IMG/VR virus record: IMGVR_UViG_3300033997_000136
Span: 149,151 to 213,150 of that record
Direction: 5' to 3' (one strand)
DNA length: 64,000 nt
Below the pieces are notes generated by a model that saw nothing but the letters and a program-made list of their open reading frames with translations, ran no database searches and was not told where the DNA came from. Both the position numbers and the translations under genes were made by a program. Positions 4,093 to 64,000 of this stretch are shown here, piece by piece. Numbering within the stretch: the stretch's first letter is position 1; each line of letters starts with the position of its first letter.

Positions 4093-4205
4093 AAATTATT
4101 CCTTAAAGAGAAGATGGCTGCATCGCTATAAAATTAGACAGTCTTACTCCATTATTTAGAACTCTACAGAATATTTTTTAGTTGTACAACACAAAAGGAT
4201 TCGCT

Positions 4206-32968: not shown

Positions 32969-33316
32969 ATGAAAAAGAATGCAATCACCATAGAAGTGAA
33001 AGGTGCAACTGGAAGTGGTAAGACAGAAGTGTGTGAACTCATACACAATGCGCTGACTGCGTACTACGGTAAGAACGTGGAGGTAGTGGCACCACAACTG
33101 GACTTAGACCGTAAAGCATCACATCTAGGTATCTTAGATGATGCGAAGTACACAGGTCAATCTTGTTTAATGATGGATAGTACCATCACATTAGTTGAGA
33201 CTGTTGTAGAGCAGCAAGAAGGTCTTAAACCACTTATGGTGATGGATTGGCACCTAGGTGACGGTGTTCAATTGGACAAAACTGATAGCTCACCTACAGG
33301 TCTTACCTTTAGTTAA
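32969..33316 (+). CDS. small P-loop protein
   Basis: ITIEVKGATGSGKT Walker A; AGGAG RBS. Confidence 0.65.
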   Translation: MKKNAITIEVKGATGSGKTEVCELIHNALTAYYGKNVEVVAPQLDLDRKASHLGILDDAKYTGQSCLMMDSTITLVETVVEQQEGLKPLMVMDWHLGDGVQLDKTDSSPTGLTFS

Positions 33317-33337
33317 AATTCAAAGACGGAATAAAGT

Positions 33338-33365
33338 AGGAGGGAGGGCAATTGCCCTCCCTCCT
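33338..33365. terminator. bidirectional terminator (perfect palindrome)
   Basis: aggagggagggcaattgccctccctcct. Confidence 0.8.
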
Positions 33366-33368
33366 CTC

Positions 33369-33550
33369 TATGTGGGTTGCATATCGTACGCCAGTTAATG
33401 AGCGCGCCATCAGCACACGGCAGCCATCAACAGGGAGAACGCTGTGTCACACACAGCCATCAGCACCAGCACGCCATACGGCAACGAATGTGTTTAGTAT
33501 CAAGTCAAAAAGTCAGCAAAATCCTTGACACAAACTGCACCACCCACATA
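33369..33550 (-). ncRNA. candidate ~185-nt structured non-coding RNA
   Basis: Ends complementary (tatgtgggt / acccacata), internal hairpins with minus-strand G-U pairs, repeated UGAUGGC motif, bounded by two terminators, no credible ORF. Confidence 0.5.
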
Positions 33551-33567
33551 CCATATACGGAATAAGA

Positions 33568-33595
33568 AGTAGAGAGGGCACGTGCCCTCTCTACT
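33568..33595. terminator. terminator after tail tube gene (perfect palindrome)
   Basis: agtagagagggcacgtgccctctctact. Confidence 0.85.
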
Positions 33596-33604
33596 CTTAC
33601 GCTA

Positions 33605-34462
33605 TTAACGACCTGACACAGCCGCAGCGATATCTTCAAGGTAACCTTTAGATACAGCTTTGATGCTGGAATCCACAGTATCAACCACAGCTTTACGCTG
33701 CATTGGGCCTGCGTTGGTATAGTTAATTTTGCTCAAGAAATCCTGAGCAACCGCTTTGATACCATCATCGCGAATTGGTGTACACGCAAACTCAATGGAG
33801 ATTTCCGGTACTGGCTGACCAGTAGTCGGGTCCATTTGGTATTCCAACTCACCAGAGGTAAGTGGCCACTCGTTTACACATAACCAGGCATCCAGTGCGA
33901 ATTGCTTCGTTGGGTCCGGCTCAATGTAAAGCGTAGTGAATGCGTAGAAGTCAATCAGACGATCAGTAGGTAACGTACCACCTAACGAGAACACACCCGG
34001 TTGACGAGTAATAGGTTCGTTAATCAGCAAGCGCTTGTAACGTTCCCAGAAGTTCGAAATACCTTTGTTGTAGTTTACATCCCACACGTGTGTAGGTGTA
34101 GACATCGCTTCGGTTGATTTACCCGCTTCACGAATCTGGTGACCACCACCACCCACAGCACGGTCAGACGCTTCGGTAGTGATACCTGAACGCAAACCGG
34201 TGATTTGTTTAGATTGCACTTCAATCAGAGATTTTAATGCAGCCGTCCACTTTTCACGCTGTGGTAAGAATGTGAAACCGCGTGGTGGTAACACCAGTAA
34301 CGGAATCAAATCCTGAGGCATGTAACCAGTCGAGTTGGTTAACTGTCCAAAATTTGGATGGTAGCCATTTTGACCACCAACCGTTAAATCTAACATAGGT
34401 GCAGCGTTACCTGCAGCATATGCTTGATTATTGAGAAACGCTGCTTTAGCGAGAGATGCCAT
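33605..34462 (-). CDS. tail tube protein (phiKZ gp30-like)
   Basis: 285 aa directly downstream of sheath; GGQNGY, LYIEPDP, AWLCVNEWP motifs. Confidence 0.8.
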   Translation of the reverse strand: MASLAKAAFLNNQAYAAGNAAPMLDLTVGGQNGYHPNFGQLTNSTGYMPQDLIPLLVLPPRGFTFLPQREKWTAALKSLIEVQSKQITGLRSGITTEASDRAVGGGGHQIREAGKSTEAMSTPTHVWDVNYNKGISNFWERYKRLLINEPITRQPGVFSLGGTLPTDRLIDFYAFTTLYIEPDPTKQFALDAWLCVNEWPLTSGELEYQMDPTTGQPVPEISIEFACTPIRDDGIKAVAQDFLSKINYTNAGPMQRKAVVDTVDSSIKAVSKGYLEDIAAAVSGR

Positions 34463-34475
34463 AATTCATTACTCC

Positions 34476-36539
34476 TTATGCAGCGGCTGCTAATTGAGCA
34501 CGGTCACGTGCGATGATGGTGTAGCTACCCACATAGCGACGGTCGTTCGTGTAAACAACGATGTCTGCGCTGTAAGCATAACCTAATGCCACATCTTCAT
34601 CGGTGAAATAAGTATTCACCTCGATGATATAACGATCATCAAAACGAGCACCATCGCGGATATCAGTTAAGATATCGTTGTTAGATTTCGTGATGAACTC
34701 TTCAGGCGTCATCCGGCTGTGACCGCCAGACATGCGTCGCCAGTTACGCTCAGCAACCTTTTCCATCTCGGTAAAGACGAATACGTTTACTAAGTCGTTT
34801 AATGAAGAACGTTTATCTTCGTACACGGACTGGAATGCCGGAATAAACAAACGTTTGTTGTGGTCAAAGGTTTGCACGCCGATAAGACCTAAGTCCCAAT
34901 CGCTATTCGCTGCAGTTTCACGTTTGTACGTCAGGTTTACGTTCTTGAATAAACTGATGACGTTGCCCGGAGATTCGTCGAAACGATTCGCATCGTCCCA
35001 CTCACCTGTGCCAGCACCCATATACTTACTAAACATGTCAGCAAGTTCGATAGTCAGCGGCAGTAAACCAGGATAACTTTCATCCGTTAACCAACCTGAG
35101 TGACCCATGATAGCGATACGACATGCTGGAGTACCGAATAATTCAGACTCAACAAAGTTACGAGCATATGCACGTAAAGCAGCTAAAGCAGACGCTTCGG
35201 CTTCTAAGTCATTCTGAGGTGCATCGACATCCTGTGTACACACAATTGCCATCACATCTTTACGAACACCTACAGGACGCATCAACGCGTACTTAGTATC
35301 CATTGGGAAACCAGTGTCGTAATAAATGCTAAGTGGAAGTGCAGCACTATCCAAATAGTTAAACGGCGATTCGGTGTAGTTGCTTAAATGGAACTTCACA
35401 GATTCAGCAAACGCTGCGTTTGACAGAGTACCGTCGCCACCGCCTACACAGTAGTGGTTTGAGTATTGAGTCAGACTGATACCGTCATTACCTAAATCAG
35501 CTAACACGATTGCGTTGTATGGAACATCGTCAATGTCGCGTGCAGATAAGAAGTTAATCAGGTACTTACCTTCTTCTGTATCTTCAGGCCAATCTAAGTG
35601 GAACGACTTTTCAGCGTCGTACAGTAAACCAACCAGCTCGTCAATAAACTCCGAATAGAAGTGAATATCTGAGAAGTTGCCTGATGTTTCTGGACGCACG
35701 TTTGGATTTTTGTATGCTTTCTGAACAACGTCAGGTGCATACAGTTTTTGTTTGGTGCGGCTGACTACTGAACCTGGTTTAAAGGTAAAGTCAACATACT
35801 CACCGCCACGCGCTGTTAACACTTCACTTGGTTGTGAACGATTGTCGGCACGTTTGATTTGCTGTATGCGGAAAATAAAGGCAGCATTTTCAGCCACGGC
35901 TTCTGTGTTAACACCATAGCTGTTACCAACCGGTGCCCACATACGGTAACCTTTGTTGTTACCATGTTCGCCGAAACTTGCAACTTTAGAATCGCAGATT
36001 GGGTAAAGTACAGACTGTGCACCACCAGTTGTTGTTTGTGTACCTACTAACTTCGTTGCCTCAGCAAAGTTGGTTGCAGGTAATTTCACGAACTTAATCC
36101 GGTAGCCAGGTACAGTATCACCCGTTGGTTGTGGTAAACCGTTAGCACCTAACACTAAACGACCCGCAGTATCGCGAATATAGGTTGGTACTTGGTCAGC
36201 TAACACATCAGCACAAAGACGCATAGTTGCTGGGTCTGGTGCATCTTCAGGTTGGATACGCTGATAAATCGCAGCGTTACCGTTCCCGTTAACAATGTTA
36301 GCCAAAACAGTTTGGTGATTTGCAAACTTCGAATCTAACTCGAATGTCTTGCTACCATACGCTCTGATTCGTTCATCACCCACCAGTAATTGAGGGTAAA
36401 TATTCCCTTCTTCAGCATAAATGAAAATATGCGGAAGGTGAGTAGGAAGCGAGTCTATCGTGGCTGCAAGTACATCCGGCGTTTGATCCTGCACACCATT
36501 TAAAATAGCGCGCGGTCTTGAGTTTAGGGCGACGGTCAT
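34476..36539 (-). CDS. contractile tail sheath protein (phiKZ gp29-like)
   Basis: 687 aa; PTHLPH, FANHQT, GGGDGT, YYDTGF, ESELFGTPACR; GGAGG RBS. Confidence 0.85.
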   Translation of the reverse strand: MTVALNSRPRAILNGVQDQTPDVLAATIDSLPTHLPHIFIYAEEGNIYPQLLVGDERIRAYGSKTFELDSKFANHQTVLANIVNGNGNAAIYQRIQPEDAPDPATMRLCADVLADQVPTYIRDTAGRLVLGANGLPQPTGDTVPGYRIKFVKLPATNFAEATKLVGTQTTTGGAQSVLYPICDSKVASFGEHGNNKGYRMWAPVGNSYGVNTEAVAENAAFIFRIQQIKRADNRSQPSEVLTARGGEYVDFTFKPGSVVSRTKQKLYAPDVVQKAYKNPNVRPETSGNFSDIHFYSEFIDELVGLLYDAEKSFHLDWPEDTEEGKYLINFLSARDIDDVPYNAIVLADLGNDGISLTQYSNHYCVGGGDGTLSNAAFAESVKFHLSNYTESPFNYLDSAALPLSIYYDTGFPMDTKYALMRPVGVRKDVMAIVCTQDVDAPQNDLEAEASALAALRAYARNFVESELFGTPACRIAIMGHSGWLTDESYPGLLPLTIELADMFSKYMGAGTGEWDDANRFDESPGNVISLFKNVNLTYKRETAANSDWDLGLIGVQTFDHNKRLFIPAFQSVYEDKRSSLNDLVNVFVFTEMEKVAERNWRRMSGGHSRMTPEEFITKSNNDILTDIRDGARFDDRYIIEVNTYFTDEDVALGYAYSADIVVYTNDRRYVGSYTIIARDRAQLAAAA

Positions 36540-60751: not shown

Positions 60752-62275
60752 GTGAGCCATTATATCGATGCCTCAGTACGTGGCGGTGTAGTACCCAAGT
60801 TCCAACCTCAAAAACAACGTTATTCTGGAATATTCTTATCAGTCCCAAACCTAGACCGCGATTATGAACAAGTAGCACATCAAGCGCGCATCATTAACCA
60901 CATTGATGCAAAAGACCCTGTGAAGATGGAAGCGTTGAATCGTCAACTCTATGTGCAATTCGAAGGTGATATCCTCGATACCACACCTAGTTGTGATTGT
61001 GGTCGCTTTCGTGGTCAACACAAAGTAGGTCTTGTGTGTCGCCCTGAACATGGTGTACGTGATGATGGTTCGTACTGTTACACTGAAGTTGCTAGTATTA
61101 CAGAACGTCCTATGGAAAGTATTTTGTGGATGACCACCCCAAAAGGGATTCATCGCTTAGTCGTTCCACGGGTATGGTTCATGTTAAGTAACTTCTTTAA
61201 GTCAGATAAGTTTAGTCCTATGGATTATCTTGCTGACCCAACGTACAGAACAAGTGACCTGCGTTCAATTGCTCGTTTAAAAGAGTTATTGGATACTGGG
61301 TGGAAACGTGGGTTAAATCAGTTTATTGAACGATTTGACGAAGCCATGGAGTTCTTAATTAAAAACCGGTTTGGGAGTGCAAAAGATGCGCAACCTCGCG
61401 AGCATTTAATTAAGTACATTGAAATGCATCGTGATAAGTTCTTTCCGCGTTACATCCCTATTCCTAACCGTGCTGTTCTTATTATTGAGAAAACACCATT
61501 AGGAACGTGGACTGACCCAACGTTGTCGTTTGGTTTAAATGCAGTACGAACAATATGTTCAATCGAAAACTCATTTATACCGTTAACACCGCGACAAATA
61601 GAGAACGCAACAATCCGTGCTATTCGTCAGTTAGCTGATTATTACGACCAGTACATCAATCGTAACGTCAGTAAGAAACCAGGTATTGCTAGACGTCAAC
61701 TTGCTGGTGGTCGATTAGACTTCTCAGCACGTGCAGTTATTAGTAGTATTCCAGGTCGACATCAATACGACGAAGTGCATATTCCGTGGGGCGTGGGTGT
61801 GATGATGTTAAAGTCACACATCACAAGTAAGTTACTTCATAGACGATATACTCCACGTCAAGCTGAAGAACTTATCTCGTTGTACACAAAACGGTATCAT
61901 CCCGTGTTAGATGAAGTTATGCAGGAACTTATCGATGAATCGCCTTATAAAGCGCTTCCTTGTATTCTCCAGCGTAACCCTACATTGACACGTGGTAGTG
62001 CTCAGTTGTTATACATTACCAAAGTTCAAACAGACCCGCGTATTAATACGTTTGCGTTTAGTGTTCTTGTACTTGCTGCATGTAACGCGGATTTCGATGG
62101 TGATGAGTTGAACATGGAGCTTCTACTGGATAGAGAAGAGCATGATAACTTTTATCGGTTATCTCCTCATTTGTATCTTTTAGATACACAGGAACCACGT
62201 AGAGTGTCTGGATTTGTAAAGATACCTGCACCTGTGATGCAAACCATCATCAACTTCATTCACGAGTTTGATTAA
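60752..62275 (+). CDS. non-virion RNA polymerase beta' subunit, N-terminal/catalytic piece (phiKZ gp55-56.1-like)
   Basis: Zn finger CDCG...C...C, KKPGIARR, RLDFSARAVI, LQRNPTL, NADFDGDELN; GTG 60752 after AAGGAG. Confidence 0.93.
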   Translation: MSHYIDASVRGGVVPKFQPQKQRYSGIFLSVPNLDRDYEQVAHQARIINHIDAKDPVKMEALNRQLYVQFEGDILDTTPSCDCGRFRGQHKVGLVCRPEHGVRDDGSYCYTEVASITERPMESILWMTTPKGIHRLVVPRVWFMLSNFFKSDKFSPMDYLADPTYRTSDLRSIARLKELLDTGWKRGLNQFIERFDEAMEFLIKNRFGSAKDAQPREHLIKYIEMHRDKFFPRYIPIPNRAVLIIEKTPLGTWTDPTLSFGLNAVRTICSIENSFIPLTPRQIENATIRAIRQLADYYDQYINRNVSKKPGIARRQLAGGRLDFSARAVISSIPGRHQYDEVHIPWGVGVMMLKSHITSKLLHRRYTPRQAEELISLYTKRYHPVLDEVMQELIDESPYKALPCILQRNPTLTRGSAQLLYITKVQTDPRINTFAFSVLVLAACNADFDGDELNMELLLDREEHDNFYRLSPHLYLLDTQEPRRVSGFVKIPAPVMQTIINFIHEFD

Positions 62276-62907: not shown

Positions 62908-62916
62908 CCTAATAAC

Positions 62917-62938
62917 GAGAAGGGGTAACCCCCTTCTC
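62917..62938 (+). terminator. intrinsic terminator
   Basis: gagaagggg-taac-ccccttctc plus T tract. Confidence 0.8.
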
Positions 62939-62955
62939 TTATTTTTTGACGGGAC

Positions 62956-63357
62956 ATGAACATGGCGAAGTTATTAGCAACATTGGATACAGGTGGGTGG
63001 GTGCGAGACCCATTAACAATTGCAACGAAGTTAATGGATTACTATAAAGCAACAGAACACTCACAGTCCAATGAGTTTCAAGCAACAACGTATTCATTGG
63101 CGTATTTAGTCCAACAATACGGAAATAAACCTGAAGACTTTGCCAGTAATATGGAACGAGAGTTGCAAAGCATATTCGGTTCACATTTTGAAATGGCGAC
63201 CGTAAGTGTTAGACCCAATAAAGAAGGTGACGAAAATGGATACTTTGGTGTAGATATCGATGTAAAAATCCAGCAGGGTGGAGAAAACTATTCCCTCGGT
63301 GCTTTACTCATTACATCGTCCAGTAACGTCATTAGTTATCAAATCAAAACTGCTTAG
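62956..63357 (+). CDS. conserved hypothetical protein
   Basis: TLDTGGWV...SQS...SLAYLVQQYG; resembles a conserved phiKZ-like core gene. Confidence 0.6.
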   Translation: MNMAKLLATLDTGGWVRDPLTIATKLMDYYKATEHSQSNEFQATTYSLAYLVQQYGNKPEDFASNMERELQSIFGSHFEMATVSVRPNKEGDENGYFGVDIDVKIQQGGENYSLGALLITSSSNVISYQIKTA

Positions 63358-63375
63358 TAAAAGGTATTAAAAGTC

Positions 63376-63957
63376 ATGCAAATCCAATTAGATTTACGGA
63401 ACCATTTGATTACTCGTTTAAATCAGTTACAGGCGAATGCAAACAATCTCGCCCATCAACTTGAACACATGGTTACTGAAATTCAAGAAGTCAGTAAAGT
63501 GATTATGACTATCCCAGCGGTGATGTCTGAAGCTCAGATGCAACAAATCATAGACAACATTCAACAGAATGGTGATATTGTTTTCTCAACTGACTTTAAC
63601 CGAGCCACAGCATTGGGTTTTATTACTCACCATATTGAAGATGGTTCGCCGATTTATACATTTGAGTCAGTCCACACTGAAATCACCGTAGAGACTGCTC
63701 CAATCTATCAACGTCTGACCGAGATGTACTCTGCCGACATTAAAGCAATTATGGACGCAACAGGCAGCACAACAGTTTGGTTCTATGTAAAACCAAAACC
63801 AGTCCCTGTTGTGGATGATACCCACGTAGTACAACAAACAACTGAACAGGTTGCTGTTGAAGCAGTGAAAACTGAAACAACCAATGTGGTTGTTGAATCT
63901 CAAAACGTAACGGACCCAGTCCAAATTAACACAGCCGATGGCGGCACATCAGAATAA
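63376..63957 (+). CDS. hypothetical protein with N-terminal coiled coil
   Basis: ORF with AAGGT RBS; T/V/E-rich tail. Confidence 0.65.
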   Translation: MQIQLDLRNHLITRLNQLQANANNLAHQLEHMVTEIQEVSKVIMTIPAVMSEAQMQQIIDNIQQNGDIVFSTDFNRATALGFITHHIEDGSPIYTFESVHTEITVETAPIYQRLTEMYSADIKAIMDATGSTTVWFYVKPKPVPVVDDTHVVQQTTEQVAVEAVKTETTNVVVESQNVTDPVQINTADGGTSE

Positions 63958-63964
63958 ATAATAC

Positions 63965-63988
63965 GGACTCAGAGCATCCTCTGAGTCC
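63965..63988 (+). terminator. intrinsic terminator
   Basis: ggactcagag-catc-ctctgagtcc. Confidence 0.7.
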
Positions 63989-64000
63989 TTAACCTTGTAT

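What the first reader, a model, noticed from the sequence alone, without database searches (positions are those of the whole stretch)
33369..33550. Insulated ~185-nt structured RNA candidate with repeated UGAUGGC motifs next to the tail tube gene
Seen: a GC-richer island between two palindromic terminators. Its ends pair (minus 5' UAUGUGGGU-GG-UGCA ... UGCA-ACCCACAUA 3'). Internal stems include GUGUCAAG/CUUGAUAC and GCCGU/AUGGC, which need G-U pairs on the minus strand, and a perfect GCUGUGU/ACACAGC (33441-33457). GUGCUGAUGGC occurs twice, with variants CUGUUGAUGGC and CCGUAUGGC. The 5' end coincides with TATG, the phiKZ late start motif, and the 3' end runs into the 33338-33365 terminator. 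Minus-strand ATG ORFs at its 5' end are only 13-14 codons. Inference: an independently transcribed late ncRNA with multivalent protein-binding sites. It could be a protein sponge, an assembly/packaging RNA or an RNAP decoy; its size is similar to 6S RNA and phi29 pRNA, but I see no sequence match to either.
Basis: partly seen in the sequence, partly recalled or inferred. Interest (0 to 1): 0.75.

Follow-up and report, generated by a model that had tools for sequence, protein, structure and literature searches.

The report
Conserved small RNA beside tail-tube gene
Just after the tail-tube gene of an uncultured phiKZ-like giant phage lies a small non-coding RNA gene of about 180-220 nucleotides, with its own phage-type start signal and terminator; it is real, conserved and structured, but its function is still unknown.

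Summary
Between two perfect 28-nt palindromes (33338-33365, 33568-33595) lies a GC-richer island (51% against 41% for the genome) whose ends pair and which carries three GCCATCA/UGAUGGC copies (about 0.01 expected).

Both palindromes are phiKZ-type terminators for the minus strand; each hairpin is followed by YTTATKYYGT.

Five distinct homologues come from metagenomes, with tube genes 89% identical in DNA. In them the unit is more conserved than neutral sites: 75% against 53% invariant columns. A GTATG start motif is invariant.

Covariation:
- The 8-bp hairpin P2 has three compensatory pairs and an invariant 19-nt loop.
- Many changes keep pairing only through G-U on the minus strand.

No reading frame is convincingly conserved. 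Rfam, including 6S and pRNA, gives nothing.

In three wastewater cDNA libraries the only near-identical pieces on 2.7 kb are whole contigs of 152-165 nt lying on the element. These runs were chosen for holding it, and two probably contain DNA.

Verdict: a genuine late, terminator-insulated, structured ncRNA on the minus strand. It is a new family of a known kind (intergenic small RNAs of phiKZ-like phages). The central fold and the function (protein binding seems likeliest) remain unproven.

The parts
33605..34462 (-). Tail tube gene (285 aa), the upstream neighbour on the same strand
   Evidence: PF23806 Phage_TTP_14, E 2.5e-73; phrog_3185. The sheath gene lies at 34476-36539.
33557..33595 (-). 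Terminator T2 of the tube gene: perfect 14-bp hairpin 33568-33595 followed by the tail CTTATTCCGT (33566-33557)
   Evidence: The tail fits the phiKZ terminator consensus YTTATKYYGT (PMC10914365). In relatives the stem has one compensatory change and the loop varies.
33547..33555 (-). Start signals: TATG (33555-33552) and TATG (33550-33547). The second, as GTATG, is invariant in all six homologues, so the predicted +1 is G 33547. The first is TATT in L034 and L040.
   Evidence: TATG with G as +1 is the phiKZ late promoter (PMC4666361). TTATTATATG stands at the same place in L003, L005 and L007.
33370..33547 (-). Body of the ncRNA (about 178 nt), followed by the terminator
   Evidence: 133 of 178 columns are invariant in six homologues against 53% of 4-fold sites in the flanking genes, P 2.5e-9. 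cDNA-library contigs cover 33373-33539. Single copy in the genome.
33537..33549 (-). P1 5' arm; it pairs with 33370-33380 to form the closing stem made by the two ends
   Evidence: 11 pairs, 98.5% of cells paired. U-A becomes U-G in relatives, which is allowed only on the minus strand.
33370..33380 (-). P1 3' arm
33497..33531 (-). P2 hairpin: stem 33524-33531/33497-33504 and an invariant 19-nt loop at 33505-33523 (GAUUUUGCUGACUUUUUGA)
   Evidence: 3 of 8 pairs changed on both sides and 2 more changed through G-U. The loop is invariant. L003 has an equivalent 8-bp stem of different sequence with the loop UUUGACUUUU. GACTTTTTGAC is also in L007.
33441..33457 (-). P3 hairpin GCUGUGU-GUG-ACACAGC
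   Evidence: The stem is invariant. The loop changes from GUG to AAG in L034, L035 and L040.
33456..33462 (-). Motif copy M1 (UGAUGGC)
   Evidence: kept as UGAUGGC in all six homologues.
33423..33429 (-). Motif copy M2 (UGAUGGC; UGAUGAC in relatives), within the invariant single-stranded stretch 33425-33436
33406..33412 (-). Motif copy M3 (UGAUGGC; UGAUGAC or UGAUAAC in relatives), within the stretch 33407-33417
33326..33365 (-). Terminator T1 of the ncRNA: perfect 14-bp hairpin 33338-33365 followed by the tail TTTATTCCGT (33335-33326)
   Evidence: Stem and tail are invariant in six homologues and the loop varies.
32969..33316 (+). Convergent neighbour: a 115-aa ORF with a Walker A motif. It is not part of the RNA but bounds the unit.

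Best explanation
The island is a stand-alone, moron-like gene for a structured non-coding RNA on the minus strand.

How it is made:
- Transcription by the phage's own non-virion RNA polymerase starts at the G of the conserved GTATG (about 33547). This is inferred.
- It starts immediately after the tube gene's terminator and stops at the second phiKZ-type terminator (hairpin 33365-33338 plus TTTATTCCGT). This is inferred from motifs.
- The product is about 180 nt plus a 3' hairpin.

Its structure:
- The 5' and 3' ends pair (P1), which together with the terminator hairpin should make the RNA stable.
- A 5' hairpin (P2) presents an invariant U-rich 19-nt loop.
- A central domain holds the P3 hairpin and invariant single-stranded stretches with UGAU motifs.
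- P1, P2, P3 and the invariant stretches are shown by comparison. The fold of the central domain is uncertain.

How it probably acts:
- It acts in trans through these invariant unpaired segments.
- The most likely mode is binding or titrating a phage or host protein late in infection, rather than pairing with phage mRNAs. This step is inference only.
For: Anatomy:
- Both flanking hairpins carry the phiKZ terminator tail on the minus strand only.
- The genome encodes RNAP beta- and beta'-like fragments.
- GTATG is invariant in six homologues, and TTATTATATG stands at the same place in three more distant relatives.

Selection:
- 75% of element columns are invariant against 53% of 4-fold sites, P 2.5e-9.
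- The loop plus bulges are invariant at 40 of 42 columns, P 2e-9.

RNA-level constraint:
- 5 pairs changed on both sides against 0-1 in slid controls, with 0 of 500 shuffles reaching this.
- The same pairs are 96.7% canonical on the minus strand but 82.4% on the plus strand.
- The P3 stem is invariant while its loop varies.
- L003 (78% tube identity) folds into the same layout, z -7.3, and is found by the covariance model at 21 bits.

Not coding.

Physical presence:
- Whole contigs of 152-165 nt with 0 mismatches, confined to 33373-33539, occur in three cDNA libraries with no flanking piece of 99% identity or more.
- The share of words held is 0.44-0.56 for the element against 0.09 for the 1.6-kb stretch.

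Precedent: short promoter-to-terminator intergenic RNAs are known in phiKZ and 201phi2-1.
Against: - Independent lineages: there are only three (the window; L002 and L038; L034, L035 and L040), so covariation rests on few events, and the structure was derived from the same sequences.
- Central fold: the consensus central rod is 27 kcal/mol worse than the MFE in the window's own sequence. Fold z-scores for the window are weak and equal on both strands.
- Promoter motif: TATG is not strand-biased in this genome's intergenic DNA, and no 5' end has been mapped.
- Read evidence: it consists of contigs without direction. The runs were selected for holding the element, two are flagged 'probably DNA', and the tool warns that holes prove nothing. 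X11 also holds a short tube-gene piece (89% identity) at similar depth.
- Mode of action: no target or partner was found, and scans of phage translation-initiation regions are no better than shuffles.
Confidence: 0.68

Rival explanations
1. There is no gene here. The stretch is a cis-acting 3' region of the tube/sheath late operon, or a spacer that insulates convergent transcription. A leaky first terminator is backed up by a second, and the structured stretch merely protects the tube mRNA from 3' exonucleases.
For: - It lies directly behind a highly expressed late gene, between convergent genes.
- Double terminators with short or different spacers stand at the same place in more distant relatives.
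- Contigs cannot tell a primary transcript from a processed 3' fragment.
- PAK_P3 ncRNA1 and ncRNA2 are processed 3'UTR pieces.
Against: - A spacer or backstop would not need 40 of 42 invariant unpaired nucleotides or a conserved GTATG directly after T2.
- The cDNA contigs do not include T2 or tube-gene sequence of the same strain.
Confidence: 0.12
2. It is a DNA-level element: repeated GCCATCA sites bound by a protein (for example iterons of an origin, or a packaging or partition site), lying in a transcriptionally quiet pocket between terminators.
For: - Three direct GCCATCA copies with about 0.01 expected.
- The island is GC-richer than the genome.
- Conservation is at nucleotide level, beyond any reading frame.
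- Two of the runs may contain DNA.
Against: - Substitutions keep pairing through G-U on the minus strand only: 96.7% against 82.4% of cells.
- Compensatory changes occur in P2, which duplex DNA has no need of.
- The repeat spacings of 17, 33 and 50 bp are not in helical phase.
- The motif itself drifts in relatives.
- Contigs stop inside the unit instead of running into the flanks.
Confidence: 0.07
3. It encodes a small protein: the 14-codon minus-strand ORF (MWVVQFVSRILLTF) that stays open in all six homologues, or the 52-70-aa plus-strand ORF that a gene caller annotated in L002.
For: - The 14-codon ORF is open in all six sequences.
- A 70-aa ORF is called in L002.
Against: - A 1-nt indel shifts the plus-strand frame between the window and L002. 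Its only database relative is itself, and its start lies inside the terminator hairpin with no Shine-Dalgarno sequence.
- The 14-codon ORF has no Shine-Dalgarno sequence. Its AUG overlaps the predicted +1. Its changes are mostly non-synonymous and follow the stem covariation.
- The internal 16-codon ORF is stopped at codon 4 in L034, L035 and L040.
- Nine 4-fold sites in the core show no change where about 3 are expected (my arithmetic).
Confidence: 0.05
4. It is a miniature mobile element or its relic: terminal inverted repeats (TATGTGGGT/ACCCACATA) flanked by a duplicated 46-nt target (the two terminator modules).
For: - A 9-nt perfect inverted repeat, and flanking direct repeats at 79-86% identity.
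- Its GC content differs from the genome's.
- Identical terminator modules recur in the genome, and the same hairpin flanks the L003 unit on both sides.
Against: - It is single copy in the genome.
- The core is absent from 185,579 bacterial and archaeal genomes and from IMG/VR.
- It is syntenic in all relatives.
- The flanking repeats are simply members of the genome-wide terminator family.

An origin as an inserted cassette is compatible with the best explanation.
Confidence: 0.03

Closest known systems
Small intergenic transcripts of phiKZ-like phages found by ONT-cappable-seq (e.g. the 141-nt phiKZ TU237 RNA ended by terminator T131; three intergenic sRNAs of 201phi2-1)
   Same: - A short unit of under 250 nt, bounded by a phage promoter and a phiKZ-type terminator.
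- No ORF with a Shine-Dalgarno sequence.
- Function unknown (PMC10914365; PMC11512511).
   Different: - No sequence relation was shown.
- Phikzvirus and LucasX have no such unit behind the tube gene.
- Transcription here is inferred, not measured.
6S RNA
   Same: - Similar size.
- The ends pair in a closing stem.
- The consensus fold in relatives is elongated.
   Different: - No hit to any 6S model at E up to 10.
- It has one-sided bulges and a side hairpin instead of a two-sided central bubble.
- phiKZ-like phages do not depend on the host polymerase that 6S targets.
phi29 pRNA
   Same: Similar size; a phage-encoded structured RNA.
   Different: - No Rfam match.
- pRNA belongs to small podoviruses with protein-primed genomes (my own knowledge).
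- Nothing links this RNA to packaging.
Protein-sponge sRNAs (CsrB/RsmY/RsmZ type)
   Same: Repeated short motifs in unpaired positions of a stable RNA.
   Different: - The defining GGA motif occurs once only (AAGGAU at the P2 loop edge; sequence).
- There are only three repeats here, of the form UGAU(G/A)(G/A)C, and they are partly degenerate.
PAK_P3 ncRNA1/ncRNA2 (abundant late phage RNAs)
   Same: Highly abundant late small RNAs of a virulent phage with unknown function.
   Different: Those lack their own start site and are processed from a 3'UTR. This unit has a conserved promoter-like motif.

Membership tests
phiKZ-type late transcription unit | TATG with G as +1 directly at the start site | tested here: met
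   GTATG at 33551-33547 is invariant in six homologues. TATATG stands at the same position in L003, L005 and L007. The definition comes from PMC4666361. This is sequence evidence only.
phiKZ-type late transcription unit | The phage encodes its own multisubunit RNA polymerase | tested here: met
   PF00562 (24.1 bits) and PF00623 (35.2 bits) hits in 739-aa and 546-aa ORFs, both over the cut-off.
phiKZ-type late transcription unit | Mapped 5' end and late timing | not testable with these tools
   There is no infection transcriptome, and the host is unknown.
phiKZ-type intrinsic terminator | GC-rich hairpin followed by YTTATKYYGT | tested here: met
   CTTATTCCGT follows 33595-33568 and TTTATTCCGT follows 33365-33338, on the minus strand only. 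The consensus comes from PMC10914365.
Structured ncRNA (general) | Base pairs kept by compensatory change | tested here: met
   5 pairs changed on both sides (3 of them in P2) against 0-1 in slid controls. L003 adds further P2 changes. There are few independent lineages.
Structured ncRNA (general) | One consensus fold shared by all members | tested here: inconclusive
   P1, P2, P3 and the terminator are shared. The central rod is near the MFE in five relatives but 27 kcal/mol above it in the window.
Structured ncRNA (general) | A discrete transcript exists | tested here: inconclusive
   Whole contigs of 152-165 nt lie on 33373-33539 in three cDNA libraries. There is no strand information, the runs were selected with the element, and DNA is possibly present.
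6S RNA | Match to the Rfam 6S covariance models | tested here: not met
   No hit at gathering score or at E up to 10.
6S RNA | Central two-sided bubble that mimics an open promoter; binding to RNAP | tested here: not met
   The consensus has one-sided 11-12-nt bulges and a branch hairpin. Binding cannot be tested here.
phi29 pRNA | Match to the Rfam pRNA model | tested here: not met
   No hit.
CsrB/RsmY-type sponge | Many GGA motifs in loops | tested here: not met
   One GGA in the 187-nt body (sequence).
Box C/D (K-turn) RNA | RUGAUGA and CUGA set opposite each other at a 3-nt bulge; Rfam snoRNA/sRNA models | tested here: not met
   UGAUGA and CUGA strings occur in relatives. No model matches, and the consensus fold does not place them opposite each other. 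The resemblance comes from memory.
tRNA/tmRNA | ARAGORN detection | tested here: not met
   0 genes in the window.

The most novel reading that the evidence does not exclude
A clade of uncultured phiKZ-like phages keeps, behind the tail-tube gene, a late RNA of common layout: a closing stem, a hairpin with a GACUUUUU loop, and a long domain with UGAU bulges. This RNA outlasts and outnumbers the phage's own DNA and mRNAs in environmental samples. On this reading it works as a decoy or scaffold for a protein, for example a host defence nuclease, an RNA chaperone, the ribosome or the phage polymerase, or it travels with the particle.
Probability: 0.15. Interest if true: 0.8.

Novelty: new member of a known kind. 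Interest (0 to 1): 0.55.

Why it matters
Non-coding RNAs of giant nucleus-forming phages are only beginning to be catalogued, and none has a known function. This candidate was found from sequence alone. It comes with a defined promoter motif, a defined terminator, covarying stems, invariant unpaired segments and a hint of high abundance in environmental RNA. That makes it a ready test object for three uses:
- mutating the loop or the bulges,
- pull-down of partners,
- use as a stable RNA scaffold.

It also shows that terminator-bounded pockets behind late structural genes are places where such phages gain and exchange small RNA cassettes.

Tried and rejected
- DNA similarity: searches of the element and of the tube/sheath genes against 50,697 phage records found nothing. 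The nearest cultured tube protein is 36% identical.
- Exact-pattern scans:
  - The invariant core is absent from IMG/VR and from 185,579 prokaryote genomes.
  - The 17-nt loop word gave 11 IMG/VR hits that the covariance model did not support.
  - The 21-nt loop word gave one hit inside a Pseudoduganella coding region, taken as chance.
- Protein trick: the antisense 70-aa ORF of L002 finds only itself among 5.8 billion proteins.
- Known RNA classes: Rfam at gathering score and at E up to 10 hit only the terminator hairpins, through miRNA models by chance. ARAGORN found nothing.
- Target search: the P2 loop and both bulges were paired against the translation-initiation regions of 229 predicted genes. 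The best energies (-20.5, -19.0, -20.9) lie within the range of shuffled queries.
- TATG census: enriched about 2-fold in intergenic DNA but equally on both strands, so it is not usable as proof of a promoter.
- The plus-strand TATG at 33369 was considered as a convergent promoter. It was rejected because it reads TCATG in all five relatives and the plus strand lacks the terminator tail.
- 6S, pRNA, CsrB-like, box C/D and retron-like readings were considered. See the membership tests. No reverse transcriptase gene is adjacent.
- The strain-variant contig L054 is identical to the window and adds nothing.

Full report
SETTING.
The window is bases 149151-213150 of a 213,150-bp IMG/VR phage contig. 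The contig encodes a phiKZ-type tail sheath (34476-36539, minus), a tail tube protein (33605-34462, minus; PF23806, E 2.5e-73) and a phiKZ vertex protein. It also carries split RNA-polymerase beta- and beta'-like genes. No cultured phage is close: DNA searches found nothing, and the best tube protein is 36% identical. The finding lies in the 288-bp gap between the tube gene and a convergent 115-aa ORF (32969-33316, plus).

THE OBSERVATION.
All described features are present.
- Two perfect 28-nt palindromes lie at 33338-33365 and 33568-33595.
- A 9-nt perfect inverted repeat joins the ends of the island (33369-33377 with 33542-33550), extended by TGCA/TGCA.
- Internal stems and a perfect hairpin at 33441-33457 are as described.
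- GC is 0.508 against 0.407 for the genome.
- GCCATCA (UGAUGGC on the minus strand) occurs three times in 187 nt, out of 15 in the whole strand, and the 11-mer GCCATCAGCAC occurs only here, twice.
- The 5' minus-strand ORFs are 13 and 14 codons.

Folding energy alone is weak evidence, with z about -2.3 on either strand.

WHICH STRAND, AND WHERE IT STARTS AND STOPS.
The genome has a family of purine/pyrimidine palindromes that serve as terminators. In phiKZ more than 70% of terminators are a hairpin followed by YTTATKYYGT (PMC10914365). Here that exact tail follows both palindromes, but only when read on the minus strand: CTTATTCCGT after 33568 and TTTATTCCGT after 33338. Only six hairpin-linked copies exist in the genome. 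The minus strand therefore reads: tube gene, terminator T2, then CGUAUAUGGUAUGUGG..., the island, then terminator T1.

The phiKZ late promoter is TATG with G as +1 (PMC4666361). Of the two TATG here, the first is lost in two relatives (TATT). GTATG is invariant in all six homologues, which puts the predicted start at G 33547. The plus-strand TATG at 33369 is not kept in relatives (TCATG). TATG as such is not strand-biased in this genome's intergenic DNA, so the promoter call rests on position and conservation, not on the motif.

RELATIVES.
A search with the tube protein found relatives at 96, 78, 72 and 62% identity and many near 50%. Fetching their contigs and the members of the 90% cluster gave five further distinct versions of the element. 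They fall into two groups (L002 and L038; L034, L035 and L040). Their tube genes are 89% identical to the window's in DNA, and 4-fold sites differ by 35-39% from the window and by about 19% between the two groups.

More distant relatives carry units of different or barely alignable sequence at the same spot. L003, L005 and L007 each have a terminator, then TTATTATATG, then about 170-220 nt, then a terminator. L011 has a 120-nt unit, L012 a 60-nt one and L009 none. Phikzvirus and LucasX have no such gap.

A covariance model built from the six sequences finds only the L003 unit, weakly (21 bits, E 7e-4). In the own genome it finds nothing but terminators. L003 nevertheless folds into the same layout: 5'/3' closing stem, 8-bp hairpin with a U-rich loop containing UUUGACUUUU, a long rod, then the terminator (z -7.3, terminator included). 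L007 contains GACTTTTTGAC.

SELECTION AND STRUCTURE.
- Across the six sequences, 133 of 178 element columns are invariant, against 170 of 320 4-fold sites in the adjacent genes (P 2.5e-9).
- The 19-nt P2 loop, a 12-nt stretch (33425-33436) and 9 of 11 nt at 33407-33417 are invariant: 40 of 42, P 2e-9.
- Variation falls in stems and linkers.
- RNAalifold gives P1 (closing stem), P2, a long irregular rod ending in P3, and the terminator.
- On that structure 97.5% of cells pair. Five pairs changed on both sides (three in P2, one each in two rod helices) against 0-1 when partners are slid. No shuffle of 500 reaches the observed values.
- By eye, the 3-4-bp extension of P2 with its 1-nt bulge is rebuilt from different letters in each of the three lineages.
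- Twelve further pairs change on one side through G-U. The same pairs read on the plus strand drop from 96.7% to 82.4% canonical. This points to RNA, and to the minus strand.

Caveats on the structure:
- There are only three lineages, and the structure was derived from these sequences.
- The central rod is the MFE, or within 5-8 kcal/mol of it, in the five relatives but 27 kcal/mol above the MFE in the window.
- Only P1, P2, P3 and the terminator are solid for the window itself.

CODING?
- The plus-strand ORF that a gene caller annotated in L002 (70 aa) is split by a 1-nt indel in the window and has no relative among 5.8 billion proteins.
- An internal minus-strand 16-codon ORF is stopped at codon 4 in three relatives.
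- The 14-codon 5' ORF stays open. However, it lacks a Shine-Dalgarno sequence, overlaps the predicted +1, and changes mostly non-synonymously in step with the stem.
- In the conserved core none of nine 4-fold positions changed. Conservation is therefore at the nucleotide level.

RNA IN PUBLIC RUNS.
The 1.6-kb stretch is fully held by subsurface and soil DNA runs, the likely source. Wastewater runs of one study held only 7-9% of its words. Asked with the 266-nt unit alone, four cDNA-type runs of that study held 44-56% of its words.

Laid on 2.7 kb, the only pieces of 99% identity or more in X11, X21 and X22 are whole contigs of 165, 152 and 156 nt. They lie on 33376-33539, 33377-33528 and 33373-33528, with no mismatch and word depth 5.3, 9 and 3.8. 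The flanks are empty. This is what an abundant, discrete, stable RNA would give.

The evidence is limited in several ways:
- The runs were picked for holding the element.
- Contigs have no strand.
- X11 and X22 are flagged as probably containing DNA.
- The tool warns that holes prove nothing.
- X11 also has a 217-nt tube-gene piece at 89% identity and similar depth, which could be another phage or a mosaic.

WHAT IT IS NOT.
- Rfam (4,227 families) gives no hit in the element at gathering score or at E up to 10, so it is not 6S, pRNA, a riboswitch, a ribozyme or a snoRNA-like RNA.
- It is not a tRNA or tmRNA.
- It has one GGA only, so it is not a CsrB/RsmY-type sponge.
- It is single copy, syntenic and absent from bacterial genomes, so it is not a mobile element now. 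The duplicated terminator modules on both sides, identical in L003, fit an origin as an inserted promoter-gene-terminator cassette.
- The invariant loop and bulges have no better complement in the phage's translation-initiation regions than shuffled sequences do.

CONCLUSION.

The mechanism is open. I favour action in trans through the invariant unpaired loop and UGAU-bearing stretches, most likely on a protein. The reasons are that these segments are conserved as sequence, occur in several copies, and have no evident RNA target in the phage. This last step is inference.

The thing belongs to a known kind: short intergenic RNAs of phiKZ-like phages seen by ONT-cappable-seq. As a family it is new and undescribed.

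Noticed in passing
window 62916-64000 (and the first 1085 nt of the contig, outside the window): The first and last 1085 nt of the 213,150-bp contig are 96.9% identical. This looks like the wrap-around of a circularly permuted or terminally redundant genome assembled from mixed strains, so the genome may be closer to complete than the 77% estimate.
   Followed up: partly
upstream of the genes starting at window 30198, 49095, 50303 and 58719, and many places outside the window: A strongly conserved AT-rich motif (roughly AACATACATTAT / AACCTATATCA; pattern AYMTAYATYAT, 12 copies, all on the plus strand) precedes many genes. It is probably this phage's early (virion RNAP) promoter.
   Followed up: partly
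genome positions 16291, 27610 and 110943 (outside the window); L003:3866-3889 and 4110-4133: A 45-nt terminator module is repeated identically three times in the genome. The same hairpin, GGAAGGGCAATTGCCCTTCC, flanks the L003 unit on both sides. Such repeats could mediate cassette exchange.
   Followed up: no
window 32969-33316 (+): The convergent neighbour is a 115-aa protein with a Walker A motif (GATGSGKT) and only sub-threshold AAA_18/ResIII hits. Its C-terminal third differs in L002, and a DUF488 gene takes its place in L003.
   Followed up: partly
window 33376-33539 (contig of run X11): The ends of this contig fall on the two strands of stem P1 with a 2-nt 3' offset, as an RNase III cut would leave. 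The other two runs end a few to eleven bases away, so this may be chance.
   Followed up: no
window 33804-34019 (run X11): The same run that holds the element at 100% identity holds a tube-gene piece only 89% identical to the window. This means either two related phages or a mosaic genome.
   Followed up: no
L011:2430-2552; L012 and L010 downstream of the tube gene: Relatives at about 50% tube identity carry other small units at the same position. One example is a 120-nt unit in L011 that starts CTTATTCCGTCTATGATATG and has GGGGGUUCCCGG twice (z -3.4). The slot behind the tube gene seems to be a hot spot for small RNA cassettes.
   Followed up: partly
window 61709-62125 (+) and genome 10819-11025 (+): RNA polymerase beta'-like (546-aa ORF) and beta-like (739-aa ORF) fragments are present, as in phiKZ-type phages with their own transcription apparatus.
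   Followed up: partly
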